A stretch of DNA of 64,000 nucleotides from Penicillus capitatus (GCA_965649825.1 OZ287699.1:310001-374000), one strand, 5' to 3'. Counted from the first letter of the stretch, positions 25,048 through 60,061 are shown. The notes: generated by a model from the letters alone, not told the origin. Translations and numbers: made by a program.

Positions 25048-27432
25048 ATGTGGGCCCCTGTGAGCGTCGTCAACACGTTTCCCTCGCACACTTCTCGTCC
25101 TCGATGCCGCGAAAAGGGCTCTTCGGTTGCCTTCTCCAGAGAATTCGACCGCGGACAAGCTCCGCGCATCAAAGCACGCATGACAAGGGGCACTGCTGCC
25201 AAAAACACGCCCCCGGCCAGCTCGACTTGGCCGCCTCTCCCTCAGACTGAACGTCACAGCTCCCGAGGTTCGACACTCGCTCGCGCAGAGGTGCGGTGTT
25301 CTTTGTCCCGCTCCGGCTTGCAGCTCTCCTCACAGGGAAACCCAAAGGAGATCTGCGAGGTCGAGCTAGAGGGATACGGTCTCGCGCAGATCCTTCAGGT
25401 CCGAGGGAGGTTTGCAGGGAGGATTGTCGAGCGAGCGGGACCGTTCTCGAGGAGGATTACCGTTCCACTCGTCTCCAAGGGTTTCTCCGATCCGGAAGAA
25501 GCGACGCGAGGATTGGCTCGCCTGCCGCCGAGTGCCGTCCGCCGTCGCGTTCACGTCCTTTCCGACAGAGAGAATGGCGTGGGGACGTTCATCTACGTGG
25601 GAGATCTAGGACTTCTCGGAGGTGGAGACAGAGAGCCCCCGGCCGGAGGCGGCGCGCTCGGACGCCAAGCTGCCGCCAGCTCCCGGCCAGAGAAGAAGCA
25701 CTCTCTGGTCTCGCCCGACATCTTTCGCCACTATGCCGGGAGGAAGGAAGAATTCAGCCAACTCTTCGAGGCGTTCACGTCGAGCGGCGAGTCGGTCGTC
25801 GCCAAGGCAATCGCAGGCCCCGCCGGCATAGGAAAGACTCAGCTCGCAATAAAGGTGTTCGAGTGGCTCAAGATGAACGACAGCTACGACCACACCTTCT
25901 GGATCCCTTCGGACTCGAAGGAGAACCTTTATGCCGCCTTCTTGAACATCGCCGAATACCTGGAGATCTCCGCAGACGACGAGATCCCGGTGCTCGTCCG
26001 CCGCGTTCACCAGGAGCTCGGAGGGTCGCGATGCCTCTACGTCTTCGACGACGCCTTTGATCTCGAACTGATCCGCGAGTACCTTCCACCGGAGGTCGGG
26101 CATGCGATTGTCACGACGCGAAACGCTGTAGCAGGGAGCTGGGAGGGCGACACGGTGCAGCTCGGGCCGTTCGACGAGTGCGATGCGTGGTTCCTCGCGC
26201 ACAGCTTCGGATACACCCGGTCGCCGCACTCGGAGGGTCTGGACGATTTGATCGAGTTGCTGCCTCCCTACCCGCTCACTCTGGCGCAGTTCTTCTCGAT
26301 GATGAAGTACGAGGGCGTGCCGAGCCCCGCCGAATGGCTGCATCAGGTGGAACGGTACGCCCCTTCGAGATACGAAGCCGGGGTCATAGAGATGCTCTCC
26401 GAAGAGCACGACGTCAGAGGAGCCAGCGCGATGGTCTACCTGTTTCGCTCGAACGTGCTGAGCATTCTGAGGGAACCCGACGACCTTGGAACGCACTGTC
26501 TCGACACACTCATCAGGCTGTCGCTGCTCGACCCAAATGGAGTGCCCATCAAGTGGGTGTGCGAATGGCACGGACAAGGAGATCGGCAATCCGAAGCAGA
26601 AGCGCAGACATCCGTAAAGGTTCTCGAGCACTACTCGTATGTCTCGTGGAACGAGAAGAACAATCAAATCTACATTCACGCAGAGACACAGCTCCTTGCG
26701 AGACACCTGCTCTTACACAGCAACGAAGCAATTCCCGAATGGAGAGAGAAGCTCGCGAAAAAGGCCGAAGACAGAGCCAGAGATCACATCAAGACCATCG
26801 TCCGTTCGATAAGTAAATACACCAGCGACTGGAGAACGGATCGTTCGAACCGAGAATCGTGGACGTCGCTCGCGCGGAACGGGGTCTCGCTCCTCAAACA
26901 CTGCGAAGAGAGCGACGACATTGGCGTGGAGTTGAAGCTAGTCGAACACATGGCAAGGGCCTACTCCGAGATGTGCATGTTTCGCGAGTCGCTCTCCCAC
27001 CTTCAAAGAGCCCTCGACGTGTGCGAGCGCCTCAACGGCGATGCGGACCATCCGGACCTCGTCCAATGCATCCAGAGCTACGCCATCGGACTCTCGCGAG
27101 TCGGAAGAGACAGCGAAGCACTGCCGTTCCGCAAAAGAGCCCTCGACATGTGCGAGCGCCTCAACGGCGACGCGGACCATCCCGACCTCGTCCAATGCAT
27201 CCGGAACTACGCCGTCGGACTCGAGCGAGTCGGAAGAGACAGCGAAGCACTGCCGTTCCGCAAGAGAGCCCTCGACATGTGCGAGCGCCTCAACGGCGAC
27301 GCGGACCATCCGGACCTCGTCCAATGCATCCAGAGCTACGCCATCGGACTCTCGCGAGTCGGAAGAGACAGCGAAGCACTGCCGTTCCGCAAGAGAGCAG
27401 AAGAAATGCATAAGCGGCTTGGAAATCAATAA
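25048..27432 (+). CDS. NB-ARC (STAND NTPase)-TPR NLR-like protein, 3-repeat copy
   Basis: Walker A GPAGIGKT, Walker B CLYVFDDA, IVTTRN, PYPLTL (GLPL-like) and IYIHAETQ (MHD-like), followed by 3 HPDLV-type 43-aa repeats. True start and a possible 45-nt intron (25291-25335) are uncertain. Confidence 0.9.
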   Translation: MWAPVSVVNTFPSHTSRPRCREKGSSVAFSREFDRGQAPRIKARMTRGTAAKNTPPASSTWPPLPQTERHSSRGSTLARAEVRCSLSRSGLQLSSQGNPKEICEVELEGYGLAQILQVRGRFAGRIVERAGPFSRRITVPLVSKGFSDPEEATRGLARLPPSAVRRRVHVLSDRENGVGTFIYVGDLGLLGGGDREPPAGGGALGRQAAASSRPEKKHSLVSPDIFRHYAGRKEEFSQLFEAFTSSGESVVAKAIAGPAGIGKTQLAIKVFEWLKMNDSYDHTFWIPSDSKENLYAAFLNIAEYLEISADDEIPVLVRRVHQELGGSRCLYVFDDAFDLELIREYLPPEVGHAIVTTRNAVAGSWEGDTVQLGPFDECDAWFLAHSFGYTRSPHSEGLDDLIELLPPYPLTLAQFFSMMKYEGVPSPAEWLHQVERYAPSRYEAGVIEMLSEEHDVRGASAMVYLFRSNVLSILREPDDLGTHCLDTLIRLSLLDPNGVPIKWVCEWHGQGDRQSEAEAQTSVKVLEHYSYVSWNEKNNQIYIHAETQLLARHLLLHSNEAIPEWREKLAKKAEDRARDHIKTIVRSISKYTSDWRTDRSNRESWTSLARNGVSLLKHCEESDDIGVELKLVEHMARAYSEMCMFRESLSHLQRALDVCERLNGDADHPDLVQCIQSYAIGLSRVGRDSEALPFRKRALDMCERLNGDADHPDLVQCIRNYAVGLERVGRDSEALPFRKRALDMCERLNGDADHPDLVQCIQSYAIGLSRVGRDSEALPFRKRAEEMHKRLGNQ
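27049..27400 (+). repeat. 129-bp coding tandem repeat x3 (last copy truncated)
   Basis: Unit HPDLVQCIxxYAxGLxRVGRDSEALPFRKRALDMCERLNGDAD. Confidence 0.95.
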
Positions 27433-28081
27433 AATCTCCATCTTGATCGGCTAACGTATTTTCATCTTGTGAGTTCCATTTGAAGGTTTCTACACATGTT
27501 TGTTTTTGCATATCGTGGCCACGTCGCTAGGACTCCGGAAACGCGAACGACGACGAAGGCTTGTTGCATCACAAGGATTGTAAACACCTTTGTGGTGCGG
27601 ATTAAATGGACTCGGAACGAACTAACGCGTTAAGCCGAATGCACGATCACGTCGAATGCATCTCTCCTCGGTAAGTTGCGCGAAGCCGAGTCTGATGCCA
27701 ATACGACAAAATCCGATATGTTGGCAATTGCGTTGATTGTTACGCTTCTACTATCGTACAAACTGCAGCATGGCTACCGGTTCTGAGTAGGGTGTAAGTG
27801 TTTCTCGTTGACGAATTTGCAATTGCTTATGATGTCGTCTTCTCATTCGATGTCACTAGCGTTTTGCGATTTTGCCACTCCATGCTGCTAGATTAGAGTG
27901 AGAAAACGGAGTTATCTGCTCTTCCTTTCCGGAGCTAGTGGTAAATGCTTTTCGTCTAGGTAGCTTTTTGCAATTTTCTTGCCGTTGGAGCGTCGATTGT
28001 AGAGAAGCGTAAAGTTGTGATATCGATATCGTTGCACTGCTTTCATCGACGGATCCCGATAACGTCGACTGAACAAAGGGG

Positions 28082-28570
28082 TGTTGCCAAGATTTGACGT
28101 GGCAATGTGACTACCTCGTTTCCGATGGGTTCACGTCTTGGGGGGCGCAGGTAGAGTCATCTGAGGCGTCGCTCTCTGGCCATGGACGAGGGATGACTCA
28201 CCTGTTCAGCGGGTCACATCGTTTTGGGCGTAGAAATGCGTAGGAGAGGAGACCCTGAGACTCTCTGTTCTTGTAAGCTTTTGGACTCTGAGCGTGCCTT
28301 CGGCGTAAAACGTGTGTGAGCAACGCTCACCCTGGCTGACGACGAGGCGCTAGCACCCTCGCGTGCCGTTGTTCCTTATCCACCGTTGTACCAGCATACT
28401 CCGTACTTATCGGCGCTAGACTTCTTCAGACAAGCGGAACGAGGAAATTCCGACGCTCGCCAAGACGACACCCTAGCCGAGGACCAACCGCCCAGTCCGG
28501 GGGAGGACGGACCCACCGACGCAGAAGTTGACGAGGAAAGACCTCAACGGGAGTCAGAGCAAGGGCGACA
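28082..28570. mobile_element. Solo LTR (489 bp) with 5-bp TSD AGGGG
   Basis: Begins TGTTGCC and ends GGCGACA (imperfect inverted termini, TG..CA). AGGGG at 28077-28081 and 28571-28575. Absent from the paralogous site near 60700-60720. Confidence 0.85.
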
Positions 28571-30549
28571 AGGGGCGCGACAATAGTAGCATTTGATTCT
28601 ATCAGGCACGTGGTTCTTCTAGTAGGCGTCGTCTTACGTGCAGCATCACTTGCTGCAAACGCGTTCTCAGGTACAGATGCTTCATGTTTCGTGATTGTGT
28701 GTTTTCTTTGCGCCGACCGTTATAAGATCTAAACTTTAATCTTGTTTTTCGTCGTTCGTATTTCGTTCGACTATGTCGTTTGGTTTGTTCTTAGCAGTCC
28801 GTCAGTTAAAGCAGAGCTTTTTGTTGTAACACTCAACTGCTTTCACTCCTCAACTGCGTGAATTCCTCAGCTATCTTTAATTAACCGTTTAGTCTTACGT
28901 TAGTTTGTTGTCTTAGTTTTTGTAACTACTTGTATGTATGTCTTTTTTCTACGGACTGACTAACACTCACTTGTTGATCTTGTTTTCAAGAAGTCTCCTT
29001 TTTTAGTGTTTGTTGTCGCGCAATGTCTTTTGGCTTTAAAGGTCGTCCGATTGCTAACTTCTTCTCGAGACACAATACCATATCACAAAGAGCCTTGCTT
29101 GCCAACGCGAAGGAGAATGACGAATAATGGATGAAAAACAGCATAAGAAAGCCATAGTGTGAACATTTGTTTTGATTTTTTGTAAAATACGAAACGATCT
29201 TACAGTAAGATCTCACTAGGTCGCCATCCTCCGATGTCGTTCTCACTCTTTGATACGCGCCGATCTTGTCTTGTGCTTTATCTCCGTTTGTCTGATTTGG
29301 CTTCTCGGCTGGATTAAGCACCCTTCCTATCTTTTAGTGAAATCTCTTGTGCGTTTCCTTTCCGGGGACCTCCCTAATTATTTGCTTGTTTTCAGTTTTC
29401 ATTGGCAGGTTCTCATTTCTTGTCATTTCTACTTTTTAACCCGTGAGACCCGTAACGATGTTTCCATTGGGCGGATTTTCAATCCTTTCGTTTTGCTCGA
29501 CTCCTCATCATCATCATCATTTAAAGGGATTATAGTGGCAGTGCATAACGCATATCAGCCACTTTGCTCGACTCCTCACGATCGCACATTTTCTTCTTTG
29601 TACTCATGGATATTAACAACACATCCGTTCGACTTCCTTTACTCTCAAGCCTCCAAGTTCCTGAAATAGGCTCCGGTACTGTAGATCTTTGACTCCTCGT
29701 CTCTATTCTAAAAAATCGTCAATTTTTAACATGTCTAGCTGCTTTTTAGTTAACAACGTGCAATGCGCATGAATCTGTCACTAAAAAAATTAGTGCGTAC
29801 GCAAGGAAGGCAGGGATATGAATAGACATTCAATTAGTTTCGTTTGCCGAAGACAGTCTTCCATGCAATCGGGAATGTGAACAAGAATGGTTTGTTTCCT
29901 ATTCATGCCTTTGATGTGACGATTACGACGTCTTCGTCGACGCGGTAGGCCTAGACAACTTGGTAAGCAGAACAGATCGTACCAAAAGCCGACGCGACTC
30001 GTGTCGTCGTCGTAACAACTGAGCTCTCATACTAGCTCTGTCATGGACAGCTGTCCACCTTCGTGCAGCTGCCACGGAATAGTATAAATTCTGAACTGAT
30101 AATGCTACAGGCAGTCTTTGTAAGCGATATGCCTTCGTCGTCGTTCCCGTTTCTGCGCGTCTGAACGACACGGCCGCGACAAGTTCTATGCGACACAGTT
30201 CCTCCGTCTCTCTTTCAGAGCAGATAGGGGCCGATTTGTTATTCAACGGCCCGTGTAAATCCCACAAACTTCTCTCTCTCTATTGGAGAGCAGATAGCAT
30301 CGCTTCAGGCACTCATCGAACATCCTTCTTGGCACGTGCACCTCGAGTGCCGAATGAAGAGTGCATTCGAGGCCTCGGTCTGAGGAAAGCAGAAGATTTT
30401 TTTTGCTTTCATGGAAGAACAGTCTGGCGTGACTGGAAACAATTCGCTCTATTCGGAGAGATTTCGGGGATGTGTATCTCCTGTATGTGGCCTTAATGTG
30501 GGGTGCGAACAATCGGACCGTCACGTTTTTTTTTCAATGCCAGTGGCGC

Positions 30550-31390
30550 CGCTGCCTTTCGCCCTGTGTTTGTAAAATCAGTGCTTTCCATCCAGCTTCT
30601 CTTGACTACTTTCCAGCGCACAAAGGGAACGCGACAGGAAGCAAAGCAGTTTGGCGGCAAAACAAGAGTCCTCGATACACCACAGCTCCAGGCCCTGAAA
30701 AAGGCAGTGATATGGAAATCTGTTTCTCTGAGGTGGTCTTCTCGGGAAGTGGGCCTCGAGAAGACGAGTAGCGCGTTCTTTCACACCACCGGCATATTAC
30801 TTACAACTACGACGACCTCTGCTGCATCCTTGATCCACACGACAGTTTTCGCTCCTGCTCTTCGCTCGTGCACATAAGGAGATCCCACCGCAGATGAATC
30901 GCAGGCATCAGGCAGGGACTACAGTTGTTGTGCGAAAAGGGCATTGGCGATGTCGTCGATCTCGATGGCGTCCTTCTGGACCTGCTGAGCGATTTGCTGT
31001 AGGACATGGATCGGATCTCGCCGCCCGCCATAGTTCAGGGCCATCGTGAGAACAGACCACCATTGTTGTGCTTTTTCTTGCTCGATGGTGTGGATCGATC
31101 AGATCATTCTTGACGAAAGCCGTTCAAAATCGTCCAAAAACTACACGCGGAGATTCCAAGATGTTCAGCAAAGCCAGGCCTGTGTGATCTTCCAGTCCAA
31201 AAGCAACAAGAGATCTGGAACCCGAGCGGGTTCTCCTTTCCAGTTCTGGCTGGAAGACACGAAGAGGTCATAGATATTGCGTCGATCCTCAAGTACTGGC
31301 ACGACGCGACGACCGACTCTAGCCTTGCGGGTAAGCAGCTTGAGAGGGAGACCAATCTGGACAGTCCATCGGCGATTTCCATCCATGCGT
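30550..31390 (-). pseudogene. Degraded cis-prenyltransferase (UPP/dehydrodolichyl-PP synthase family)
   Basis: MDGNRRW (ATG 31386), SSQNW, MALNYGGR and DLLMCTSEEQERKLS occur in family order but in shifting frames with stops. Confidence 0.7.
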
Positions 31391-31536
31391 CTCGCAGTGC
31401 GTCGAGGCAGTGGCGGCGAAATCTTCACGCTCTTCTAGAAACGCGCTCCCTTCGACGCACAGAGCTTCGGTGCAGTGTAACCTTAAAGACGCGCACTCAG
31501 ACACGCGACGCCATTCCCGTCATCTTCATTTTTGCG

Positions 31537-33419
31537 ATGGCCGTACGATGTCTTTCGTCTGGCACGCTCGTTCGCGCGGCGCCTCGATGGCCTTCGCGAC
31601 GATTGATTGCTTGGACGAAACAGCGACGGATCCGCAGAATAGGCGAACGCGTTCGCGGCTTCACCGTTATCCATTGCACCGCATCGGACAGACACAAGAA
31701 CCTCAGCGTCACACAGACGGCCACGAGAGTGTCGGAGCTTCTCGAGCCTCTCGACTTGGGAGAAGAGCGAACAAAGATGCAGTCCTATCTCGAATCCTGG
31801 GAAGACCTGCCATCGCGCTTCAAACTCCTCATCACGGCCTTCCTCTCTTACGTCATCTGCAACATGGTGATCTTGACCTGAGCGAAGAATCCGATGGACG
31901 ATCCCGTGTCGTCGTCTGCAGGATAAAGTCAACATGAGTGTGGCGATCATTCCTATGGCGCATCAGTTTGGATGGAATGCCACCGTTTCTGGCTTGGTCC
32001 AGTCAGCGTTCTTCTACGGCTACATGTTCTGCCAGCTGCCGGGCGGCTACCTCAGTACGCGGTTTTCGGGATCGCGGATGCTGCCTATCGGTGTTGGACT
32101 GTGGTCCGTTGCGACATTTGGCCTCCCGGCTGTAGGAGGGAGCGTCCCTGGACTCTGCGCCTCCCGTTCGCTGGTGGGATTGGGCGAGGCATTGGCGCCG
32201 GCAGCCGTGGCAGATATCGTAGCGAAGACCATTCCCCCTGAAGAGCGATCCAGGGCTGTCAGCTTTGTCAATGCTGGGCTGTACGTCGGGACGATTCTTG
32301 GTAAGATGGGACGTTTTTGGGCAGAAGAGGGCAGCAGTGCGTTCATCTTCTAGGACTGTTGACGTCGCCGATGCTGATCAATGCCTTTGGCTGGCCAGCG
32401 GTGTTCTACGTCTTTGGAGGGACTGGACTCGTCTGGGTCGTGGCTTGGGAAATGCTGGTCGAAGGATTGAAGCGCTCCGACACAGAAACGTACAAAAAAG
32501 TCAAAAGTGTGAGATTCTCACACATTCCTGAATTTGATCCACGTGTTTTTTAGAACTGACTGGACCGTCAGCCTCTGTCGGCCAAGAAGACATTCCATGG
32601 CGAGCCATGTTACGATGCCGGCCAGTTCGTGCTCTGATGTTCACACATTTCTGCTCTGGATGGTGCCGTTTCTCACATGTCTTTGCCAAAAGAGTGAGAT
32701 GTGTGATGCAGGTTTCATTTTACCATTTTATCCTGGCTGCCTTCTTACTTCACCAGCACACTGGGTCTGGAACTGGGCGATGCAGCACGCATCTCCCTCA
32801 TGCCACCCGTCGCTGGTTAACCCCTCCTCCCTCACCGTCGACACCAACGCTGTCGTCCTTATTCTGTAGGAATTGTGATTTCGAGCATTGCAGGGCCAAC
32901 AGCCGATGCTCTTATCGCAAGGGGATGGGAAACAGGGATCGTTCGAAAACTCTCTCAGTGCATCGCATTCGTCGGTCCTTCGCTCTGTCTCATCGGCGCC
33001 TCCATCTCCGATTCCAACGAGACCCGCGTCGCATTGCTGACGGCGTCGATTGGCCTGGGAAGCTTCTGCCTTCCTGGTTTCTACTCCAACTCTCAAGACC
33101 TCACCCCAAAATACGCCGGATTTCTCCTCAGCATGACGTCGACGCTTGGCGCTTTGCCCGGAATCATAGGTACCGTCCGATCAGGGAGGGTTTCTGGAGG
33201 CCGACAGAGATTCTTGTAGGCGTGTCGGTCACGGGGGCTATTCTGGATGCCACGAATTCGTGGTCAATAGCTTTGTTCGTCCCTTCTATTATCTTCATGC
33301 TATTAGGTGCCGTTGTCTTCGGTCTCTACGGCAGAGGACACGAAATTCACTTTACAGACAACACACCGTTCGCTTTCGAGAAACACATTCCGTGGAAGAC
33401 CTTGCCAAAACGCGAGTGA
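31537..33419 (+). CDS. PHT4: Plastid PHT4/ANTR-type MFS phosphate/anion transporter (multi-exon)
   Basis: Transit-like N-terminus; FLSYVICNM|DKVNMSVAIIPMAHQFGWNATVSGLVQSAFFYGY; SLVGLGEALA; QDLTPKYAG. Confidence 0.88.
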
Positions 33420-33863
33420 TGTCCTTTTCTTCACCTCACTCCTACTGTCTGCTATTTCGTTCACAATATATGATCCATTCTTGTTGCTATTTTTGAGTGC
33501 AACAAGTAAAGGGAGAAAACATGTTCTCAGAGAGTCGATTTGAAGTCATCCAAGAACGAAGCCGAGATCTTCCCGCGACGACGCGAAAAACGCAAACGCC
33601 CGAAGCTGCGCACGTCCTTCAGCAAAGCCGCCTCAGATTTCTCTTGTCGAGATGCGCGCCGGGTCCAGCAACGTGTCCATGTTGAGTTTTTGACATATCA
33701 TTGCTGCGCAGGCGCTTCGCATCGATTGACATGGAATGACACACGCCCTCATACGAACACTCACTTTTCGACTATTTTCTACAAATACACAAACAAACAG
33801 TTTTGTCCAACAGACTCCACCGTGATATCAACGCATCCACCGACTCGGCCAACGCAAAACAGC

Positions 33864-35318
33864 ATGTCCGTTGAGAGTACGTTCTATCGCTATTCGGCTG
33901 CGCTCAAGAAGCACCGGTGTTGAAGGCGGCACAGGGAGCAACGCCGGCGTCTCGTTCTCGTACAAGATTCTCAAGCACGCGTGGTTCTCCTCGTATGAAG
34001 TGAGCGATGGTCCTCGTCGGGTAAGGTCTTCGAGATAACCTCTTGCTGCAGTGCCGCGTGCATCGCTACTTGATCGACAACAGCGAGCTCGAGTTCGAAA
34101 CGAAGCCTTTCGAAGTGAACGGTCACAAGTGGTGCGTTCGTCGACGTTCAGGGGCGATGTGCGAGTATGATGGTACAGGCGCATCAGTATCAAGCATCAC
34201 GACGACGGTCACCTCGGCATTCGTCTTCGTTCTTTGGAAGAGAGATGCGTCGGCGTGCATTTTGGCATGACGCTTGTCAACTTTAGCGACGAAACGAAGT
34301 CGGTGTACTCTGGTACGACCGCATGCTGCATCGGCGATCGGGGTTCTGGATTTCGCTGTGATGACAGGTGGACGGGTGTGCTTCTCTGAGACGGCGCGTG
34401 GATGGGGAAGGGAAGATCTCGTCGCCATTGATGTCATGGAGAGTCCGGCGTCCGGTTTCTGGCTGGGCGATTCCTTCGTCATCCGAACAGACATTCGCAT
34501 CATCACCCCCGAAAACGAATCGCAGATGATCTCCGTCGACGGAAACACGCTAACGTGCACCGTAAGCCCTGTGCCATACACAACGGATCAGCTCACCGGC
34601 GTTGTGTCCCCAGTGGCGTCTCGGAAGAGTGATGGGGAGGAGTCCTTTCAAACTGGAGTCCAAAGAATTTGCATTGCGCGACACGAAATGGTGAGCACTG
34701 TACTCGAGAGGCGATGACTGGCGTGGTTTCGACAGGATGCTGTTCGTCGGTCTGTGCGATCCGAAGACCTCCAGCAATTTGTCCTTTCACGTTTACAACT
34801 CCGGCGAACAAGACTCTCGTATTCGCTTCGAACTCCGAGCGCTGCACGTCGACGCCGCATCCGACCGTTTCAAGAGTTGTGCACCTGAGCGGCGTGCATT
34901 GTTAAGGGATGGCGCGTAGGCTTTACGGAGACAATTCTTCCGAAGCGTGTTTCTGGATGGAAGCGCTTTTTGAGTGGGGAGGAAGTGTCGGATGCGTCGC
35001 TAGGATTTCTCGAGGGAGAGTGGATTACCTTCGTCTCTGTGATCACGCTCGTGGAGGACGAGCTGCATCCGAATTCCAACTTAGCGGAAACTGCAGAATG
35101 CGTGATCTGTCGAGTCAGCCCCCAAGTGGCTGGGGTGCTCCATGGAAACACGTTGAATGTGCTTCTAATCGCAAGGCTAAGCTCAGCTGTGCTGTCTGTT
35201 TAGGGTACACAAGTGTTTTTGTTTGGAGTGCGCCAGGCGCTTTGCGCAGCAGAACGAGGATCTCAGGTGTCCCTTGTGCCGCAAAGAAGTGGATCGCATC
35301 ATCGAGAGGTTCTATTGA
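33864..35318 (+). CDS. Tandem MATH/TRAF + C-terminal RING protein (multi-exon)
   Basis: CRVHRYLIDNSELEFETKPFEVNGHKW, WGREDLVAIDVMESPASGFWLGDSFVIRTDI, SLGFLEGEWITF and CVICRVSPQVAGVLHGNT/HKCFCLECARRFAQQNEDLRCPLCRKEV. TGA at 35316-35318. Confidence 0.8.
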
Positions 35319-36385
35319 ACAGTGCAGCAGAAACGCACGCATCGCGACGGCATTAGTGATTGAACGCTCTTTCGTATTATAGCAGGATCCATGATTTGCC
35401 AACATTTTTGTGAGAGAGCAACGCTCTCTTTGTCAACACCTGTCAGCTCGAAGGGTATCTGTTAACTACGTCTCTGGTATTTCCCATCTTTGTACACTAT
35501 TAGGTCTGCTATGTTTAAATGCTTCTGCTATTCATGTGGGCATCTTTTTGTGACAAACGATCAACTATGTGTTTCTAGGGCATTTAGACTTATGTTCAAT
35601 CCGTGCCGTGTTGCTTTTGTATTTGCGTTGAGTGTGTGGTCCCGTTTCGTTTTATGAGCTGTCCGGGAGGATTCTTTTTTTCGGTACAGTTGTGATGCTT
35701 GATGGAATCTCGATCACTCTTCCTGTCCTTTGTCTATCGGCCCCTGCGCAGTGGAGGGGGACAGTTACAAAAAAGCCATGGGTACTTGAATCGCAGCTGT
35801 CTTATTTCGTGCAGATTTTCGTCATGGTGTAGTTCTCAGCCGTGTGGATCGTTCTTTAAAAAACAAATGAAAACATGCTTTCCACATCAGTCTGGCCTCC
35901 AACCGTAGAATCTTTTGATCAACGGAAAGAAGTTCCTCATCGATAGAGTTGGAGAAGGATCGTTAGGCACCCGTCTGTTGCTTGAGGGAAAATGTGCAAT
36001 TGAGTATGAGCGTCCTGGATTCGCACGGAATTCGCTAACACACGGCGGGTAGGGTCAACATTTAGATGTCTTTGTACACCTGCGGCGATGGAACGAGCAG
36101 CAGTGCCTGTGATGTACCTGCCAGTTCGATGCTGCCCAGAACACATGCATTATTTCGAGCTACTTCACACAGCCTAGTTCGTTCTCCATTCAAACGCATG
36201 TAGATTTTAAAGAGGGTGCCATAATAGTAATGAAAATGTTAGAGCAAAGCAATAGAATTCATCAAGAGATGGGGGATCCTATGATTGTACGCAGGAGAGG
36301 TAGGTATGATGAGAGAACACAACATTTTCGACAGGGGATGTAAGTGCGAGACCGCGGCACAGTCTTGCAACTTCGGCAGCCGCCT

Positions 36386-36510
36386 TAGTCACCACCATCT
36401 CCACCATCTCCACCATCGCCACCATCGCCACCGCCACCGCAAACATCACTACCGCTATCATCTTTCATATCCCTGTTACCGCTATCATCTTTCATATCCC
36501 TGTCTTCTTT
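36386..36510. repeat. 9-bp CCACCATCT/G repeats plus a 27-bp tandem duplication (36450-36503)
   Basis: Direct reading. The minus strand encodes (RDMKDDSG)x2 and GDGGDGGD-stop; the plus strand encodes PPSPPSPPS. Confidence 0.8.
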
Positions 36511-41648: not shown

Positions 41649-41667
41649 ACGAGCGTCAAACGGAAGG

Positions 41668-50617: not shown

Positions 50618-50663
50618 CTGCCATTCATGAGAGACATCTGCTGCCATTCATGAGAGACATCTG
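50618..50663. repeat. Perfect 23-bp tandem duplication
   Basis: CTGCCATTCATGAGAGACATCTG x2. Confidence 0.9.
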
Positions 50664-54590: not shown

Positions 54591-56128
54591 GAAGATGAAG
54601 TCCGGCCTGGACCCGATGTTTCTTCCCAGAGAAAGAAATAGCACGAGGAACTGGACGCATGCATAAAAAAGTGAAAGGGACAGAATCTGGTGTGGTGTCA
54701 ATCAAAGAGTTCAATCTCTTTATCAATGGACTGACGTCGTAAGGAGGAACTTCTGTCGTCTGTGGATCCAATGCCATGCGAATCTGTCCTCGAGGACACA
54801 TCATTCGCATCGGATTGATCGCACCGATCACACCATTCTTCGAATTGATGGAGAGGGAGAGCATTTCCGAAACGCCCGTAACCGCTCGTTAGAACTGGAT
54901 CTCCTCACAAAGGCCCGTTTCCTTGTGCTTTGAGAGAATAGATATCTCTTGGCAACCCATACATCCATCAGACGATCTCAAGGAGTGAAGCTGGATATGC
55001 TGGTTCGATTCATGAAGGCATTTGAACATCTGTTCCGTTGTGCAATCGCCAAGACACGCTGGTATCGTCACTCCTCTGGCAGCTTCCTGCAAAGTCTTGA
55101 CAAAACTAAGGATTTGATGACACCTGAGTTTGCTCATGGTCAGGTGCTGCGATTCAACACTGTTGAGTGATGGATGTATCGACAATGAGAGTGAGCCATT
55201 TACCGCAGGGAATCTATACTCGGACAGCCAAAGAGTGGAACACCGACGATGAGGTATGCTTGCTGAATCTCGTCTCTATTCCGCTTACGGCCATACTTTG
55301 GTCCAATCGGTTAACGGCGAGATCAAAGTGTTTTAAGTCATGACGTTCGTTTTGGGACGTAAATGGTAAACGAGAGTGTGTCAGCAAAATATGGCGTGAT
55401 GGAACATCTGCCTGCCGTATTTCAAGGCCGTCGTTCGTCGTTTCGTATCTTCACCGGCGTCGTACTCGGCCCATTTCATCAAGCAGATTTCCACTTCTGC
55501 GATCCATCTGATCTCCACTTGCCTGACGTAATTTGTTTATCCATGCATCGAGTTCGCAAAACTACCCGCGACGCATTTAACGCGGTAAAAAACCTGTTCT
55601 GAAAAACGCTCGTGTGAGTTGCCGTTCGCAGAACCAAGTTTGGAGCAACGACCAGTCGCTGGACCGCGAAGAAATGGCCGACGGTTCTCTCTCCGACCCG
55701 GAGCGTTCTGAAAGACAAAACGGAAAGAAAAGCGTACGTGGATTTGATGATAAAGTAAGCGTATCGAACACATCCGTGAATGCTGACACGGGCGCGCATT
55801 CTCTAGTGTGTCCCTTTAACGGAGGCCGAAGAAGGCACATTCACCAAAGAAGGTCTGAAGAAGTCGTTCGGAGACAAGGCTCGGATGCCTCGCCAAATCG
55901 AAACCCTCGGAAGGAGAAACGTGGCTGGCGGCGAGGCGCGCAATGGCGCGCTCCGACGAGGAAAGGTTAGTAAGAGCCGTGCGTTGTTTAGAAAATCCGA
56001 GTCCTGCGTCTTTCATCAGGGGAGCCGACACAAAGACAGCACATCGAGTCCGAGACTCAACGTTTATCAGGCTTCGAAGGTGATAAGCCCCTTTCCGATG
56101 ACTTGTATCGCAACAACGTGTTCGACAG

Positions 56129-59100
56129 ATGTGGGACCCTGTGAGCGTCGTCAACACGTTTCCCTCGCACACTTCTCTTCCTCGATGCCGCGAAAAGGGC
56201 TCTTCGGTTCTCTTCTCCAGAGAATTCGACGGCGGACAAGCTCCGCGCATCGAAGCACGCACGACAAGGGGCACTGCTGCCAAAAACACGCCCCCGGCCA
56301 GCTCGACTTGGCCGCCTCTCCCTCAGACTGAACGTCACAGCTCCCGAGGTTCGACACTCGCTCGCGCAGAGGTGCGGTGTTCTTTGTCCCGCTCCGGCTT
56401 GCAGCTCTCCTCACAGGGAAACCCAAAGGAGATCTGCGAGGTCGAGCTAGAGGGATACGGTCTCGTGCAGATCCTTCAGGTCCGAGGGAGGTTTGCAGGG
56501 AGGATTGTCGAGCGAGCGGGACCGTTCTCGAGGAGGATTACCGTTCCACTCGTCTTCAAGGGTTTCTCCGATCCGGAAGAAGCGACGCGAGGATTGGCTC
56601 GCCTGCCGCCGAGTGCCGTCTGCCGTCGCGTTCACGTCCTTTCCGACAGAGAGAATGGCGTGGGGACGTTCATCTACGTGGGAGATCTAGGACTTCTCGG
56701 AGGCGGGGACAGAGAGCCCCCGGCCGGAGGCGGCGCGCTCGGACGCCAAACTGCCGCCAGCTCCCGGCCAGAGAAGAAGCACACTCTGATCTCGCCCGAC
56801 ATCTTTCGCCACTATGCCGGGAGGAAGGAAGAATTCAGCCAACTCTTTGAGGCGTTTACGTCGAGCGGCGAGTCGGTCGTCGTCAAGGCAATCGCAGGCC
56901 CCGCCGGCATAGGAAAGACGCAGCTCGCAATAAAGGTGTTCGAGTGGCTCAAGATGAAGGGCAGCTACGACCACACATTCTGGATCCCCTCGGACTCGAA
57001 GGAGAACCTTTCCGCCGCCTTCCTGAACATCGCCGAATACCTGGAGATCTCCACAGACGACGAGATCCCGGTGCTCGTCAGCCGCGTTCACCAGGAGCTC
57101 GGAGAGTCGCGATGCCTATACGTCTTCGACGACGCCTTTGACCTCGAACTGATCCGCGAGTACCTTCCACCGGAGGTCGGGCATGCGATTGTCACGACGC
57201 GAAACGCTGGAGCAGGGAGCTGGGAGGCCGACACGGTGGAGCTCGGGCCGTTCGACGAGTGCGATGCGTGGTTCCTCGCGCACAGCTTCGGATACACCCG
57301 GTCGCCGCACTCGGAGGGTCTGGACGATTTGATCGAGTTGCTGCCTCCCTACCCGCTCACTCTGGCGCAGTTCTTCTCGATGATGAAGTACGAGGGCGTG
57401 GCGAGCCCCGCCGAGTGGCTGCATCAGGTGGAACGGTATGCCCCTTCGAGATACGAAGCCGGGGTCATAGAGATGCTCTCCGAAGAGCACGACGTCAGAG
57501 GAGCCAGCGCGATGGTCTACCTGTTTCGCTCGAACGTGCTGAGCATTCTGAGGGAACCCGACGACCTTGGAACGCACTGTCTCGACACACTCATCAGGCT
57601 GGCGCTGCTCGACCCGAATGGAGTGCCCATCAAGTGGGTGTGCGAATGGCACGGACAAGGAGATCGGCAATCCGAAGCAGAAGCGCAGGCATCCGTAAAG
57701 CTTCTCGAGCACTACTCGTATGTCTCGTGGAACGAGAAGAACAATCAAATCTACATTCACGCCGATACACAGCTCCTAGCGAGACACCTGCTCTTACACA
57801 GCAACGAAGCAATTCCCGAATGGAGAGAGAAGCTCGCGAAAAAGGCCGAAGACAGAGCCAGAGATCACATCAAGACCATCGTCCACTCAATAAGCAAATA
57901 CACCAGCGGCTGGAGAACGGATCGTTCGAACCGAGAATCGTGGACGTCGCTCGCGCGGAACGAGGTCTCGCTCCTCAAACACTGCGAAGAGAGCGACGAC
58001 ATTGGCGTGGAGTTGAAGCTAGTCGAAAACATTGCATGGGCTTACTATAAGTTGTGCATGTTTCGCGAGTGGCTCTCCCACGGTCAAAGAGCGCTCGACG
58101 TGTGCGAGCGCCTCCACGGCGATTCGGACCATCCGGACCTCGTCCGATGCATCCAGAACTACTCCGCCGGACTCTCGCAAGCGGGAAGAGACGGCGAAGC
58201 ACTGCCGTTCCTCAAGAGAGCCCTCGACATGTACGAGCGCCTCAACGGCGACGCGGACCATCCGGACCTCGTCCGATGCATCCGGAGCTACGCCGCCGGA
58301 CTCTCGCGAGCGGGAAGAGACACCGAAGCACTGCCGTTCGACAAGAGAGCCCTCGAGATGTGCGAGCGCCTCAACGGCGACGCGGACCATCCGGACCTCG
58401 TCCGATGCATCCGGAACTACGCCGTCGGACTCGAACGAGTGGGAAGAGACACCGAAGCACTGCCGTTCCGCAAGAGAGCGCTCGACATGTGCGAGCGCCT
58501 CAACGGCGACGCGGACCATCCGGACCTCGTCCAATGCATCCAGAGCTACGCCGTCGGACTCGAGCAAGTCGGAAGAGACACCGAAGCACTGCCGTTCTAC
58601 AAGAGAGCGCTCGACATGTGCGAGCGCCTCAACGGCGACGCTGACCATCCGGACCTCGTCCTATGCATCCGGAACTACGCCGCCGGACTCTCGCCAGCGG
58701 GAAGAGACAGCGAAGCACTGCCGTTCCTCAAGAGAGCGCTCGACATGTGCGAGCGCCTCAACGGCGACGCGGACCATCCGGACCTCGTCCGATGCATCCA
58801 GAGCTACGTCGTCGGACTCTCGCAAGCGGGAAGAGACGGCGAAGCACTGCCGTTCCTCAAGAGAGCGCTCGACATGTGCGAGCGCCTCAACGGCGACGCT
58901 GACCATCCGGACCTCGTCCTATGCATCCGGAACTACGCCGCCGGACTCGAGCAAGTCGGAAGGAACAGCGAAGCACTGCCGCTCTACAAGAGAGCGCTCG
59001 ACATGTGCGAGCGCCTCAAAGGCGACGCGGACCATCCGGACCTCGTCCGATGCATCCGGAACTACGCCGTCGGACTCGAGCAAGTCGGAAGAAACAGCGA

Positions 59101-60061
59101 AGCACTGCCGTTCCTCAAGAGAGCGCTCGACATGTGCGAGCGCCTCAACGGCGACGCGGACCATCCGGACCTCGTCCAATGCAACCAGAGCTACGCCGTC
59201 GGACTCTCGCGAGCGGGAAGAGACAGCGAAGCACTGCCGTTCCGCAAGAGAGCGCTCGACATGTGCGAGCGCCTCAACGGCAACGCGGACCATCCGGACC
59301 TCGTCCGATGCATCCGGAGCTACGCCGTCGGACTCGAGCAAGTCGGAAGGAACAGCGAAGCACTGCCGCTCTACAAGAGAGCGCTCGACATGTGCGAGCG
59401 CCTCAACGGCGACGCGGACCATCCGGACCTCGTCCTATGCATCCGGAACTACGCCGTCGGACTCTCGCAAGCGGGAAGAGACGGCGAAGCACTGCCGTTC
59501 CTCAAGAGAGCGCTCGACATGTGCGAGCGCCTCAACGGCGACGCTGACCATCCGGACCTCGTCCAATGCAACCAGAGCTACGCCTTCGTACACTCGCGAG
59601 TCGGAAGGAACAGCGAAACACTGCCGTTCCTCAAGAGAGCGCTCGACATGTGCGAGCGCCTCAACGGCGACGCTGACCATCCGGACCTCGTCCAATGCAA
59701 CCAGAGCTACGCCGTCGGACTCTCGCGAGTGGGAAGAGACAGCGAAGCACTGCCGTTCGGCAAGAGAGCGCTCGACATGTGCGAGCGCCTCAACGGCAAC
59801 GCGGACCATCCGGACCTCGTCCGATGCATCCGGAGCTACGCCGTCGGACTCTCGCGAATCGGAAGAGACAGCGAAGCACTGCCGTTTTACAAGAGATCGC
59901 TCGACATGTGCGAGCGCCTCAACGGCGACGCGGACCATCCGGACCTCGTCCAATGCAACCAGAGCTACGCCGCCGGACTCTCGCGAGTGGGAAGAGACAG
60001 CGAAGCACTGCCGTTCCGCAAGAGAGCAGAGGAAATGCGTAAGCGGCTTGGCAGTCAATAA
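56129..60061 (+). CDS. NB-ARC-TPR NLR-like protein, 15-repeat copy (1310 aa)
   Basis: Same NTPase motifs as copy 1. The length difference 1310-794=516 aa equals 12 x 43 aa. Confidence 0.92.
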   Translation: MWDPVSVVNTFPSHTSLPRCREKGSSVLFSREFDGGQAPRIEARTTRGTAAKNTPPASSTWPPLPQTERHSSRGSTLARAEVRCSLSRSGLQLSSQGNPKEICEVELEGYGLVQILQVRGRFAGRIVERAGPFSRRITVPLVFKGFSDPEEATRGLARLPPSAVCRRVHVLSDRENGVGTFIYVGDLGLLGGGDREPPAGGGALGRQTAASSRPEKKHTLISPDIFRHYAGRKEEFSQLFEAFTSSGESVVVKAIAGPAGIGKTQLAIKVFEWLKMKGSYDHTFWIPSDSKENLSAAFLNIAEYLEISTDDEIPVLVSRVHQELGESRCLYVFDDAFDLELIREYLPPEVGHAIVTTRNAGAGSWEADTVELGPFDECDAWFLAHSFGYTRSPHSEGLDDLIELLPPYPLTLAQFFSMMKYEGVASPAEWLHQVERYAPSRYEAGVIEMLSEEHDVRGASAMVYLFRSNVLSILREPDDLGTHCLDTLIRLALLDPNGVPIKWVCEWHGQGDRQSEAEAQASVKLLEHYSYVSWNEKNNQIYIHADTQLLARHLLLHSNEAIPEWREKLAKKAEDRARDHIKTIVHSISKYTSGWRTDRSNRESWTSLARNEVSLLKHCEESDDIGVELKLVENIAWAYYKLCMFREWLSHGQRALDVCERLHGDSDHPDLVRCIQNYSAGLSQAGRDGEALPFLKRALDMYERLNGDADHPDLVRCIRSYAAGLSRAGRDTEALPFDKRALEMCERLNGDADHPDLVRCIRNYAVGLERVGRDTEALPFRKRALDMCERLNGDADHPDLVQCIQSYAVGLEQVGRDTEALPFYKRALDMCERLNGDADHPDLVLCIRNYAAGLSPAGRDSEALPFLKRALDMCERLNGDADHPDLVRCIQSYVVGLSQAGRDGEALPFLKRALDMCERLNGDADHPDLVLCIRNYAAGLEQVGRNSEALPLYKRALDMCERLKGDADHPDLVRCIRNYAVGLEQVGRNSEALPFLKRALDMCERLNGDADHPDLVQCNQSYAVGLSRAGRDSEALPFRKRALDMCERLNGNADHPDLVRCIRSYAVGLEQVGRNSEALPLYKRALDMCERLNGDADHPDLVLCIRNYAVGLSQAGRDGEALPFLKRALDMCERLNGDADHPDLVQCNQSYAFVHSRVGRNSETLPFLKRALDMCERLNGDADHPDLVQCNQSYAVGLSRVGRDSEALPFGKRALDMCERLNGNADHPDLVRCIRSYAVGLSRIGRDSEALPFYKRSLDMCERLNGDADHPDLVQCNQSYAAGLSRVGRDSEALPFRKRAEEMRKRLGSQ
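58130..60030 (+). repeat. 129-bp coding tandem repeat x15 (last copy truncated)
   Basis: 15 HPDLV units counted in the translation. Confidence 0.95.

What the first reader, a model, noticed from the sequence alone, without database searches (positions are those of the whole stretch)
25048..60061. Duplicated NLR-like genes with 3 versus 15 near-identical 129-bp TPR units
Seen: two intact NB-ARC-TPR ORFs, almost identical through the N-terminus and NTPase, differing by exactly 12 repeat units. A cluster of amino-acid changes sits in the helix just before the array (HMARAYSEM vs NIAWAYYKL). Known: fungal NLRs with highly conserved internal WD/TPR/ANK repeats and Ectocarpus NB-ARC-TPR genes diversify recognition by repeat shuffling. 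Inference: a green-algal receptor system that changes specificity by unequal crossover within an intronless array; I am not aware of this being characterised in chlorophytes.
Basis: partly seen in the sequence, partly recalled or inferred. Interest (0 to 1): 0.9.

Follow-up and report, generated by a model that had tools for sequence, protein, structure and literature searches.

The report
Green-algal NLR-like genes with hypervariable TPR arrays
Two duplicated genes in a siphonous green alga encode NLR-type switch proteins whose tandem 43-residue TPR repeats vary in number and at a fixed set of exposed positions, as in the fast-evolving non-self receptors of fungi; their closest outside relatives are in Bacteroidota bacteria.

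Summary
ORF A (25048-27432, 794 aa) and ORF B (56129-60061, 1310 aa) are intact. They are 94% identical over residues 1-654 and differ by exactly 12 in-frame 129-bp units (3 versus 15).

Both encode a beta-rich N-terminal domain with no Pfam match, an NB-ARC NTPase and kinesin-light-chain-type TPRs. VDE homology places the host in or near the green-algal order Bryopsidales.

The genes belong to a family of at least 30 members. Unit variation is mostly non-synonymous and falls at about 11 positions, mainly in TPR helix A. Nineteen paralogues show the same positions, and so does the cluster of changes just before the array.

An independent assembly of the same locus has 41 units of different composition at copy B, and more than 3 at copy A, where its consensus is scrambled. 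So the arrays are real and unstable, but the counts 3 and 15 apply to one assembly or haplotype, and collapse in the window is not excluded.

New here: full-length collinear homologues (26% identity, N-domain included) occur in Bacteroidota, including Candidatus Amoebophilus. That raises horizontal transfer.

This is a new lineage for a known kind, the fungal-type NLR with highly conserved repeats. Function and expression are untested.

The parts
24540..28081 (+). Duplicated block, copy A: about 0.5 kb upstream, the gene, and about 0.65 kb downstream
   Evidence: Self-BLAST gives 95.4% identity to 55619-58479, and 27003-28081 matches 59631-60712. Sliding identity is patchy, 89-99.5%.
55619..60712 (+). 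Duplicated block, copy B
25048..27432 (+). Gene A: intact 794-aa ORF (N-domain, NB-ARC, 3-unit TPR array)
   Evidence: The AlphaFold2 model has mean pLDDT 75. Best Foldseek matches are 6MFV (STAND-TPR), Apaf-1, CED-4, ZAR1 and NRCs.
56129..60061 (+). Gene B: intact 1310-aa ORF (N-domain, NB-ARC, 15-unit TPR array)
25048..25335 (+). Codons 1-96 of A (B: 56129-56416). Either a disordered leader or not translated; the true start is uncertain.
   Evidence: 7 non-synonymous and 0 synonymous differences between A and B. pLDDT is below 30. Paralogues conserve it poorly, apart from the ATG context.
25336..25626 (+). Beta-rich N-terminal domain with no Pfam family, residues 97-193 (B: 56417-56707). Candidate signalling or effector module.
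   Evidence: It is conserved in all paralogues. It has no Pfam hit at E up to 10. In the full-length model it forms six strands and two short helices at pLDDT 60-82. A profile search finds it at the N-termini of other STAND proteins and fused to a beta-lactamase-family domain.
25738..26691 (+). NB-ARC NTPase and ARC/winged-helix region, residues 231-548 (B: 56819-57772). Motifs: Walker A GPAGIGKT 25816-25839, Walker B LYVFDDA 26035-26055, TTR 26107-26124, GLPL-like PPYPLTLAQ 26263-26289, MHD-position IYIHA(E/D)TQ 26668-26691.
   Evidence: Pfam NB-ARC. The alignment to ZAR1 and NRC4 runs from the P-loop to TTR. K263, D334 and H544 are invariant in 40 sequences, including the bacterial ones. pN/pS between A and B is 0.30.
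26920..27009 (+). Degenerate cap TPR ('unit 0'), residues 625-654 (B: 58001-58090). It carries the cluster of A/B substitutions.
   Evidence: Helices 625-641 and 645-663. Eight of the 38 A/B differences lie here, and 6 of those 8 fall on the units' hypervariable positions (hypergeometric P = 0.034).
27010..27396 (+). Array A: 3 x 129 bp (43-aa TPR units)
58091..60025 (+). Array B: 15 x 129 bp (43-aa TPR units)
27397..27432 (+). C-terminal cap AEEM(H/R)KRLG(N/S)Q plus stop codon (B: 60026-60061), conserved in paralogues
24440..24800 (+). Upstream non-coding block conserved among paralogues; candidate promoter or 5' UTR
   Evidence: tblastx and blastn hits to L002 and L006 appear in all frames, which indicates DNA-level conservation.

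Best explanation
These are two paralogous, apparently functional genes for NLR-like STAND NTPases of a siphonous (Bryopsidales-type) green alga. They belong to a lineage-specific family of at least 30 genes.

Protein layout (shown). Each protein has a beta-rich N-terminal module of unknown activity, an NB-ARC nucleotide switch, and a solenoid of 43-residue TPRs of the kinesin-light-chain type.

Evolution of the array. The units are kept about 91% identical at the DNA level by unequal crossing-over and gene conversion, within an array and between loci. These events add, delete and reshuffle units. This is inferred from differences in unit number and composition between assemblies and between near-identical family members.

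Selection. Substitutions are kept at about 11 positions: helix A positions 19, 21-23, 26, 29, 30; the turn and the start of helix B, positions 31, 34, 35; and helix B position 41. The pattern is shown; the inference is that these positions form the ligand-binding face.

Biochemical cycle (inferred from the family, not tested here). The TPR solenoid holds the NB-ARC in an ADP-bound off state. Binding of a non-self or altered-self ligand releases it. Nucleotide exchange drives oligomerisation, which clusters the N-terminal domains so that they signal or execute a response.

Origin (open). The architecture was possibly acquired from, or shared with, Bacteroidota symbionts.
For: Architecture. Pfam finds NB-ARC plus TPR_12/TPR_10. 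PDB sequence hits are the KLC TPR and the ZAR1/NRC4 NB-ARC. The AlphaFold2 model has pLDDT 75, and its best Foldseek hits are 6MFV (STAND with TPR sensor), Apaf-1, CED-4, ZAR1 and NRCs. Walker A K263, Walker B D334 and H544 are invariant across 40 homologues.

Both copies are constrained. pN/pS is 0.30 over the NB-ARC and 0.28 over residues 441-600.

Repeat dynamics.
- Among the 18 units there are 34 non-synonymous but only 9 synonymous distinct variants.
- pN/pS is 3.65 at the hypervariable codons and 0.34 elsewhere.
- With hypervariable positions defined independently from 19 other paralogues, pN/pS is 2.93 versus 0.40. Ten of the 11 positions are shared.
- The cap TPR differs between A and B at the same positions.

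Instability.
- The independent assembly ERZ25074695 is collinear with the window. Its copy B has 41 units. It is dominated by a unit type absent from window B that carries the YAIGL motif, which in the window occurs only in copy A.
- Its copy A has about 1.2 kb of extra units.
- The partly syntenic copy in a related genome (P0001, L002) has 7-8 units.
- Family members in the same 90%-identity cluster have 13/20/10, 8/14 and 6/16 units.

Host and context. The genes lie between VDE, TPT and fibrillin genes on one side and an ABC transporter gene on the other, on a 1.58-Mb contig.

Precedent. Fungal NB-ARC-TPR NLRs have highly conserved 42-aa repeats, repeat-number polymorphism and positively selected concave-face residues (PMC4986451).
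Against: - There are no expression data, and the true 5' end is unknown.
- No ligand, oligomer or cell-death activity has been shown.
- The N-domain has no recognisable fold match. The stand-alone model had pLDDT 40.
- Pairwise pN/pS among recombining repeats is not a formal test. The whole-unit ratio is 1.21, with a bootstrap interval of 0.59-3.3.
- The helical moment of variability on helix A is not significant (0.36, P = 0.09).
- The second assembly is noisy, with 1-2-bp indels and a scrambled stretch at copy A. Both of its arrays are longer than in the window, which would also fit systematic collapse in the window's assembly.
- Mean amino-acid identity among the B units (81%) is below the 85% threshold used for fungal 'highly internally conserved' repeats.
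Confidence: 0.6

Rival explanations
1. The 3-versus-15 difference is wholly or partly an assembly artefact. The arrays are real, but one or both were collapsed (or, in the other assembly, expanded), so the '12-unit difference between paralogues' is not biological.
For: The independent assembly has more units at both loci: 41 versus 15, and about 9-13 versus 3. A1 and A3 are 98% identical, which makes collapse easy. Sequence divergence from the other assembly switches from 0.14% to 2.3% mismatches exactly at array A, as it would at an assembler's phase switch or join.
Against: Both window arrays have a perfect 129-bp register and leave long intact ORFs. The 41-unit array is not a longer version of the window's 15 units. 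Its dominant unit type is absent from window B, and units B5-B15 have no counterpart above 95%. The two arrays therefore differ in content as well as length. Unit number also varies among many other family members. The other assembly is the noisier one.
Confidence: 0.25
2. The genes act in allorecognition, as the fungal het genes do, rather than in pathogen sensing. They would police the mixing of cytoplasm or nuclei between genetically different coenocytic thalli or regenerating protoplasts.
For: The same features (STAND NTPase, highly conserved repeats, repeat-number polymorphism, hypervariable surface positions) mark the fungal HET-E/D/R-type NLRs of syncytial fungi (PMC4986451). The host is a siphonous, multinucleate alga. 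These features are.
Against: There is no evidence for a partner locus or for balanced allele classes. Nothing here separates allorecognition from pathogen or virus recognition.
Confidence: 0.12
3. The genes are neutral or selfish descendants of a bacterial (Bacteroidota symbiont) STAND gene acquired by horizontal transfer. They would be multiplying in the genome without a host receptor function, and the repeat variability would be simple tandem-repeat instability.
For: Full-length collinear homology to a Bacteroidota MAG protein: 26% identity over 760 columns, E 1e-68, including the N-domain and the IYIHA.TQL motif. The N-domain plus NB-ARC plus TPR layout occurs in Candidatus Amoebophilus sp. 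36-38 in a genuinely bacterial gene neighbourhood. No homologue turned up in the Caulerpa, Ostreobium or plant proteomes held in the database. GC and GC3 are well above those of neighbouring genes.
Against: The NB-ARC is under purifying selection in both copies. Non-synonymous excess is confined to the same exposed positions in 19 paralogues, which neutral instability does not predict. The bacterial contigs have 35-49% GC, not the 59-64% of these genes. A transfer origin is compatible with a host receptor function. The database search was word-limited, so absence from other green algae is weak evidence.
Confidence: 0.1
4. The proteins are housekeeping STAND/TPR scaffolds or regulators, for example of organelle or cytoskeletal processes, with no role in non-self recognition.
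For: TPR_12 repeats of the kinesin-light-chain and NPHP3 type also occur in non-immune scaffolds. Codons 1-96 are rich in Ser, Arg and Thr, like an organelle presequence (this is my reading only).
Against: The family is large and lineage-specific, repeat number is unstable, and hypervariable sites have pN/pS of about 3. None of this is expected for a conserved housekeeping scaffold.
Confidence: 0.05

Closest known systems
Fungal NLR-like STAND proteins with highly internally conserved repeats (Podospora NWD/HNWD family; sesB-like/NB-ARC/TPR genes such as Pa_2_10340; Dyrka et al. 2014, PMC4986451)
   Same: They share the NB-ARC plus TPR_10-type repeats of about 42 aa encoded as an uninterrupted tandem array. 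Units are highly similar, repeat number is polymorphic, evolution is concerted within and between paralogues, and the variable or selected positions lie in the helices of a KLC-like TPR fold. N-terminal modules are diverse.
   Different: The host is a green alga. Units are 43 aa, not 42. The N-terminal domain is not one of the fungal effector domains (no Pfam hit). Mean unit amino-acid identity in array B (81%) is below the fungal 85% cut-off, although A and several paralogues reach 87-98%. Sequence affinity is to bacterial rather than fungal proteins in the searches I could run.
Ectocarpus (brown alga) NB-ARC-TPR candidate receptors (Zambounis et al. 2012, PMC3341825)
   Same: Both are algal NB-ARC proteins with 42-aa-class TPR repeats, both form clustered multigene families, and in both repeat shuffling is proposed as the way specificity is diversified.
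   Different: In Ectocarpus each 126-nt TPR is a separate exon and shuffling acts on exons. Here the whole array is one intron-free ORF, so the mechanism must be unequal crossover or gene conversion in coding DNA. The two lineages are unrelated (stramenopile versus Chlorophyta).
Bacteroidota STAND proteins with the same N-domain, NB-ARC and TPR layout (MAG GCA_039820225.1 MEO1300999.1; Candidatus Amoebophilus sp. 36-38 OJW71216.1), and bacterial NB-ARC/TPR antiviral STAND proteins in general
   Same: Homology is collinear from the N-domain through NB-ARC, the IYIHA.TQL motif and the TPRs (26% identity, E 1e-68). The same unannotated N-domain sits at the N-terminus of NB-ARC-TPR, NACHT-HEAT and TPR-NACHT proteins.
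   Different: The bacterial TPR units are diverged from one another and are not near-identical tandem copies. The bacterial genes sit in bacterial operon-like contexts at 35-49% GC. No function is known for them either.
Land-plant TIR-NBARC-TPR proteins (TNP/XTNX; Johanndrees et al. 2023, PMC9806590) and the single Ulva NB-ARC-TPR gene UM014_0006.1 (PMC8891106)
   Same: They are Viridiplantae proteins that combine an NB-ARC with C-terminal TPRs instead of LRRs.
   Different: TNPs carry a TIR domain, are low-copy and conserved, and are not reported to have near-identical repeats. The family here has no TIR, is expanded, and is hypervariable. I did not compare sequences with TNPs or with the Ulva gene.

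Membership tests
NB-ARC (AP-ATPase) STAND NTPases / NLR-like proteins | P-loop NTPase domain matching NB-ARC, with Walker A GxxxxGK[TS] and Walker B hhhhDD | tested here: met
   Pfam PF00931 scores 38 bits against a cut-off of 23.5. GPAGIGKT and LYVFDDA are present. G257, G262, K263 and D334 are invariant in 40 homologues.
NB-ARC (AP-ATPase) STAND NTPases / NLR-like proteins | RNBS-B/sensor-1 TTR motif and GLPL-type motif in ARC1 | tested here: met
   IVTTRN aligns with the ZAR1 VTTR motif. PPYPLTLAQ has P409 and L410 nearly invariant. The GLPL equivalence rests on position and conservation only.
NB-ARC (AP-ATPase) STAND NTPases / NLR-like proteins | MHD-type histidine at the end of the winged-helix (ARC2) domain | tested here: inconclusive
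   H544 in IYIHA(E/D)TQ is invariant in all 40 sequences. It lies 281 residues after the P-loop lysine and directly after a predicted beta-hairpin. Sequence alignments to ZAR1 and NRC4 stop before it, and Foldseek gave no residue-level alignment.
NB-ARC (AP-ATPase) STAND NTPases / NLR-like proteins | Overall fold: NBD, helical domain and winged helix followed by a repeat sensor | tested here: met
   Foldseek hits are 6MFV (STAND with TPR sensor, E 6e-12), Apaf-1, CED-4, ZAR1, NRC and Sr35.
NB-ARC (AP-ATPase) STAND NTPases / NLR-like proteins | Ligand-induced nucleotide exchange and oligomerisation that activates an N-terminal effector | not testable with these tools
   This needs biochemistry or cell assays.
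NLRs with highly internally conserved (HIC) repeats, as defined for fungi | Repeats more than 85% identical over at least 100 aa | tested here: inconclusive
   Array A units are 93-98% identical at the DNA level. Array B averages 81% amino-acid and 91% DNA identity. Paralogues P0001, P0167, P0170 and P0172 reach 87-91% amino-acid identity.
NLRs with highly internally conserved (HIC) repeats, as defined for fungi | Repeat-number polymorphism between alleles or strains | tested here: inconclusive
   Counts are 15 versus 41 units (B) and 3 versus about 9-13 (A) between two assemblies that are 96-99.5% identical in the flanks. Counts within 90%-identity clusters are 13/20/10, 8/14 and 6/16. No reads were available, so assembly error cannot be separated from polymorphism.
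NLRs with highly internally conserved (HIC) repeats, as defined for fungi | Diversifying selection at a few positions on the repeat's binding surface | tested here: inconclusive
   pN/pS is 2.9-3.7 at 11 positions and 0.34-0.40 elsewhere. The same positions recur in 19 paralogues and in the cap TPR. Seven of the 11 lie in helix A. No recombination-aware likelihood test was run, and no coordinates were available to confirm the concave face.
Ectocarpus-type exon-shuffled NB-ARC-TPR genes | Each TPR unit encoded by its own exon | tested here: not met
   The arrays are continuous ORFs of 387 and 1935 bp with no interruption.
Land-plant TNP (TIR-NBARC-TPR) | N-terminal TIR domain | tested here: not met
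   No TIR hit was found in Pfam, even at E up to 10 on the N-terminal region.

The most novel reading that the evidence does not exclude
A coenocytic green alga acquired a Bacteroidota-symbiont STAND gene (novel beta-rich N-domain, NB-ARC, TPR) by horizontal transfer and expanded it into a hypervariable receptor repertoire. Mitotic unequal crossover among the thousands of nuclei of one thallus would then generate within-individual receptor diversity. That would be a somatically diversifying innate receptor system, convergent with fungal HIC-repeat NLRs. The scrambled consensus at copy A in the second assembly would be its footprint.
Probability: 0.08. Interest if true: 0.9.

Novelty: new member of a known kind. 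Interest (0 to 1): 0.62.

Why it matters
Intracellular immunity in green algae is almost uncharted. In the green lineage, NLR-like proteins with TPR sensors were known only as the conserved, low-copy TNPs, and the Ulva proteome survey noted a single NB-ARC-TPR gene.

An expanded family whose TPR arrays behave like the hypervariable repeats of fungal NLRs would show that this way of generating recognition diversity arose, or was transferred, a third time. It would have done so in another syncytial organism.

The work also defines an unannotated N-terminal module shared with STAND proteins of intracellular Bacteroidota. That gives a concrete, testable case of NLR-like genes shared between a bacterium and a eukaryote, and a candidate new signalling or effector domain.

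Tried and rejected
- A stand-alone AlphaFold2 model of the N-domain with 14 paralogues gave pLDDT 40. That is too poor for a fold search, so the domain's fold stays unidentified.
- Pfam on the N-domain and on the ~560-aa insert of long-type paralogues, at E up to 10, gave nothing meaningful.
- I looked for a 3-unit higher-order repeat in window array B. TRF reports a 387-bp period in the other assembly. Lag-3 identity in the window (92.1%) is barely above lag 1 (91.0%), so I rejected it.
- The helical-moment test of variability on helix A was not significant (0.36, P = 0.09). Variable residues cover the exposed half of the helix rather than a single stripe.
- I looked for a conserved upstream coding exon. 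Conservation at 24370-25340 appears in all frames, so it is at the DNA level, and no exon could be called.
- I tried to name the species.
- Copy A in the second assembly (L001 11900-12560) is a scrambled consensus, so its unit number can only be bracketed at about 9-13.
- Contamination was rejected. The genes lie between algal genes on a contig of more than 1.5 Mb in an independent assembly.
- The long alternative-frame ORFs inside the arrays (for example 58032-60083) were rejected as by-products of stop-free repeats.

Full report
OBSERVATION

The window holds two long ORFs on the + strand: 25048-27432 (794 aa) and 56129-60061 (1310 aa). Tandem Repeats Finder reports a 129-bp period with 3.1 copies at 27005-27398 and 15.1 copies at 58084-60027, without indels. 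At the protein level the HPDL anchor recurs every 43 residues, 3 and 15 times. The length difference of 516 aa is exactly 12 units.

The two genes lie inside a dispersed segmental duplication, 24540-28081 versus 55619-60712, at 95.4% identity. Identity along the block is patchy, from 89% to 99.5%. Outside the array the proteins differ at 38 of 654 residues.

Two qualifications apply. First, the units average 91% DNA and 82% amino-acid identity, so 'near-identical' is generous. Second, the first 96 codons are doubtful as coding sequence. They show 7 non-synonymous and 0 synonymous differences between the copies, pLDDT below 30, and poor conservation in paralogues. The ATG context, however, is conserved.

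WHAT THE PROTEINS ARE

Pfam gives NB-ARC plus TPR_12/TPR_10. PDB sequence searches hit the kinesin-light-chain TPRs and the NB-ARC domains of ZAR1 and NRC4, with alignments running from the P-loop to the TTR motif.

A full-length AlphaFold2 model built on a 40-sequence alignment has mean pLDDT 75. It shows:
- a disordered leader (residues 1-96);
- a beta-rich domain (about residues 100-185, pLDDT 60-82);
- a linker;
- an alpha/beta NTPase followed by helical and winged-helix parts;
- a regular helix-turn-helix solenoid from residue 599 to the C-terminus.

Its best Foldseek matches are 6MFV (a STAND protein with a TPR sensor), Apaf-1, CED-4, ZAR1, NRCs and Sr35. Walker A (GPAGIGKT), Walker B (LYVFDDA), TTR and a GLPL-like PPYPL motif are present. 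So is an invariant histidine in IYIHA(E/D)TQ at the position expected for the MHD motif. That last equivalence rests on position and invariance only.

The N-terminal domain has no Pfam match even at E = 10. A stand-alone model of it was too poor to search with.

HOST AND FAMILY

The genes sit between a violaxanthin de-epoxidase gene (19609-20955, -), a triose-phosphate-translocator-family gene (21229-22461, +) and two fibrillin ORFs on one side, and an ABC transporter gene on the other. The VDE protein is closest to Caulerpa lentillifera (63%) and Ostreobium quekettii (51%). The genome is therefore that of a green alga in or near the order Bryopsidales. The species could not be named.

Database searches recover at least 30 family members at 53-67% identity, all from a few unnamed ENA assemblies. 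Most are a 'long type' with an extra helical region of about 560 aa between the N-domain and the NB-ARC. The window's genes are the short type.

REPEAT ANATOMY AND SELECTION

Among the 18 units, 34 distinct non-synonymous variants stand against 9 synonymous ones. Variation concentrates at unit positions 19, 21, 22, 23, 26, 29, 30, 31, 34, 35 and 41.

By the model's secondary structure, positions 15-30 form helix A and positions 31-33 form the turn. Positions 34-43 plus positions 1-9 of the next unit form helix B. Seven hypervariable positions therefore lie in helix A. The invariant C20, Y24, G27, L28 and G32 follow the spacing of a packing face.

Nei-Gojobori pN/pS values are:

| Region | pN/pS |
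|---|---|
| Hypervariable codons of the units | 3.65 |
| Other 32 codons of the units | 0.34 |
| NB-ARC, copy A versus copy B | 0.30 |
| Hypervariable set defined from 19 other paralogues | 2.93 |
| Remaining codons under that definition | 0.40 |

Choosing sites by their variability is circular. I therefore re-defined the site set from the within-array entropy of 19 other paralogues. Ten of the 11 positions coincide, and the ratios in the last two rows use that independent set.

Six of its eight A/B differences fall on the same hypervariable positions (P = 0.034). These are point substitutions, so the pattern does not depend on repeat shuffling.

These are descriptive statistics on recombining, non-independent repeats, not a formal test. 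The whole-unit ratio is 1.21, with a wide bootstrap interval of 0.59-3.3.

IS THE REPEAT NUMBER REAL AND VARIABLE?

A protein look-up led to an independent assembly of the same locus (ENA ERZ25074695, contig ctg340523_41x, 1.58 Mb). I walked along it in four steps. It is collinear with window 14863-61728.

Copy B. The other assembly has 41 units (L005 12728-18002). They are not the window's 15 units plus extras. At least 16 in-frame units are of a type (LVLCIQSYAIGLKQVGRDSEALPFYK) that window B lacks. That type carries the YAIGL motif, which in the window occurs only in copy A. Window units B5-B15 have no close counterpart. This points to turnover of content and to exchange between the two loci, not merely to a difference in length.

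Copy A. The other assembly has about 1.2 kb of additional unit sequence, but its beginning is a scrambled consensus. I can only say about 9-13 units.

Other family members. The partly syntenic copy in a related genome (P0001 in L002, 75% DNA identity, flanks partly shared) has 7-8 units. Family members within single 90%-identity clusters have 13/20/10, 8/14 and 6/16 units.

Taken together, the arrays are real and unit number is labile across the family. The other assembly is noisy, however, and both of its arrays are longer. Collapse in the window's assembly therefore cannot be excluded without reads.

RELATIVES OUTSIDE THE ALGA

Beyond the family, the best hits are bacterial NB-ARC/TPR proteins. 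A profile of the N-domain, searched against 1.8 billion representative proteins, found 82 hits. They include:
- a fusion to a beta-lactamase-family domain, from an unnamed ENA assembly like those that hold the family (P0018);
- NB-ARC-TPR, NACHT-HEAT and TPR-NACHT proteins.

Named members come from a Bacteroidota MAG and from Candidatus Amoebophilus sp. 36-38, where the gene lies among ordinary bacterial genes.

Gene A aligns with the MAG protein over 760 columns at 26% identity (E 1e-68). The alignment runs from the N-domain through the NB-ARC and the IYIHA.TQL motif into the TPRs. The whole architecture is therefore shared with Bacteroidota, which makes horizontal transfer a serious possibility. 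The direction of transfer is open.

No homologue appeared among the Caulerpa, Ostreobium or land-plant proteins in the database, but that search is limited by shared words. The NLR genes are richer in GC (59-64%; GC3 73-78%) than their neighbours (52%; GC3 59-63%). The bacterial contigs have 35-49% GC. This fits GC-biased gene conversion in a recombining family at least as well as it fits foreign origin.

MECHANISM

Shown:
- the domain architecture;
- constraint on the NTPase;
- unit-level hypervariability at fixed positions;
- differences in unit number and content between assemblies.

Inferred from what is established for NB-ARC STAND proteins:
- the TPR solenoid is the sensor and keeps the NTPase off;
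- ligand binding allows nucleotide exchange and oligomerisation;
- the clustered N-domains then signal.

Inferred from the fungal precedent (PMC4986451):
- unequal crossover and gene conversion within and between paralogous arrays generate new solenoids;
- selection keeps changes on the binding face.

The ligand class (pathogen, virus, symbiont or allogeneic self) is unknown.

COMPARISON WITH WHAT IS KNOWN

The closest analogue is the fungal NB-ARC-TPR NLR with highly internally conserved repeats. The features are the same, in a different kingdom and with a different N-domain.

Ectocarpus NB-ARC-TPR genes differ in that each TPR is a separate exon (PMC3341825). That defining feature is not met here.

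In plants, TNPs are described as the only TPR-containing NLR-like class (PMC9806590), and they carry a TIR domain, which is absent here. A single NB-ARC-TPR gene was noted in Ulva without analysis (PMC8891106).

Six literature searches found nothing on such a family in Bryopsidales or other green algae.

VERDICT

The thing is a new member, in a new lineage, of a known kind, with two additions: an unannotated N-terminal module and a Bacteroidota connection. Interest is moderate to high.

Noticed in passing
window 14863-26921 versus 27007-36944 (L001): Divergence from the independent assembly jumps from 0.14% mismatches upstream of array A to 2.3% downstream. The switch falls exactly at the array, which suggests a recombination breakpoint or an assembler's haplotype switch.
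   Followed up: partly
L001 11900-12560: The start of the copy-A array in the second assembly is a scrambled consensus that mixes pre-array and unit sequence. The cause could be read heterogeneity (length heterozygosity or mosaicism) or poor polishing.
   Followed up: partly
L006 3001-7908 (ERZ25074695 ctg340592_344x) versus L001 (ctg340523_41x): The same ENA sample holds family members on contigs with 344x and 41x coverage. The sample may contain two related genomes or very unequal haplotypes.
   Followed up: no
P0018 (598 aa, ENA contig of 337 kb): The same N-terminal domain (residues 20-123) is fused to a beta-lactamase-family (PF00144) domain instead of NB-ARC-TPR. The module is therefore shuffled between architectures.
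   Followed up: partly
P0003, P0007, P0011, P0013-P0015, P0167-P0182: Most family members are a 'long type' with a helical region of about 560 aa and no Pfam match, inserted between the N-domain and the NB-ARC. The Amoebophilus homologue also has a long spacer.
   Followed up: partly
window 25336-27396 and 56417-60025: The NLR genes have GC 59-64% and GC3 73-78%, against 52% and 59-63% for the neighbouring VDE, TPT and ABC genes and the 4722-7049 ORF.
   Followed up: partly
window 24440-24800: A non-coding block upstream of the genes is conserved at the DNA level with paralogues that are only about 55-67% identical in protein. It is a candidate shared promoter or 5' UTR. The ATG context QMW(A/D)P(V/L)SV is also conserved.
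   Followed up: partly
window 13155-13820 and 16259-16885: Two tandem paralogous ORFs (38% amino-acid identity, about 3.07 kb apart, flanked by 84-88% identical DNA patches at 12820/15897 and 14124/17178) have no Pfam domain.
   Followed up: partly
window 19609-23776: VDE (-), a TPT-family transporter (+) and two PAP_fibrillin ORFs (-) lie directly upstream of gene A. VDE and TPT are single uninterrupted ORFs, so this genome seems intron-poor, at least here.
   Followed up: no
L002 757-6905: An LTR retrotransposon (gag-aspartic protease, RT, RNase H, integrase) lies upstream of the partly syntenic NLR gene P0001 in the related genome, between flanks that match window 23972-24316 and 24383 onward.
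   Followed up: no
window 4722-7049: A 775-aa ORF has no significant Pfam domain. The only hit is a sub-threshold one to RBP_receptor.
   Followed up: no
window 58032-60083, 57259-58050, 59435-60070 (-) and others: Long ORFs in other frames and on the opposite strand of the arrays are by-products of stop-free repeats. A prokaryotic-style gene caller picked such frames in the ENA record (L005 14397-18032).
   Followed up: yes
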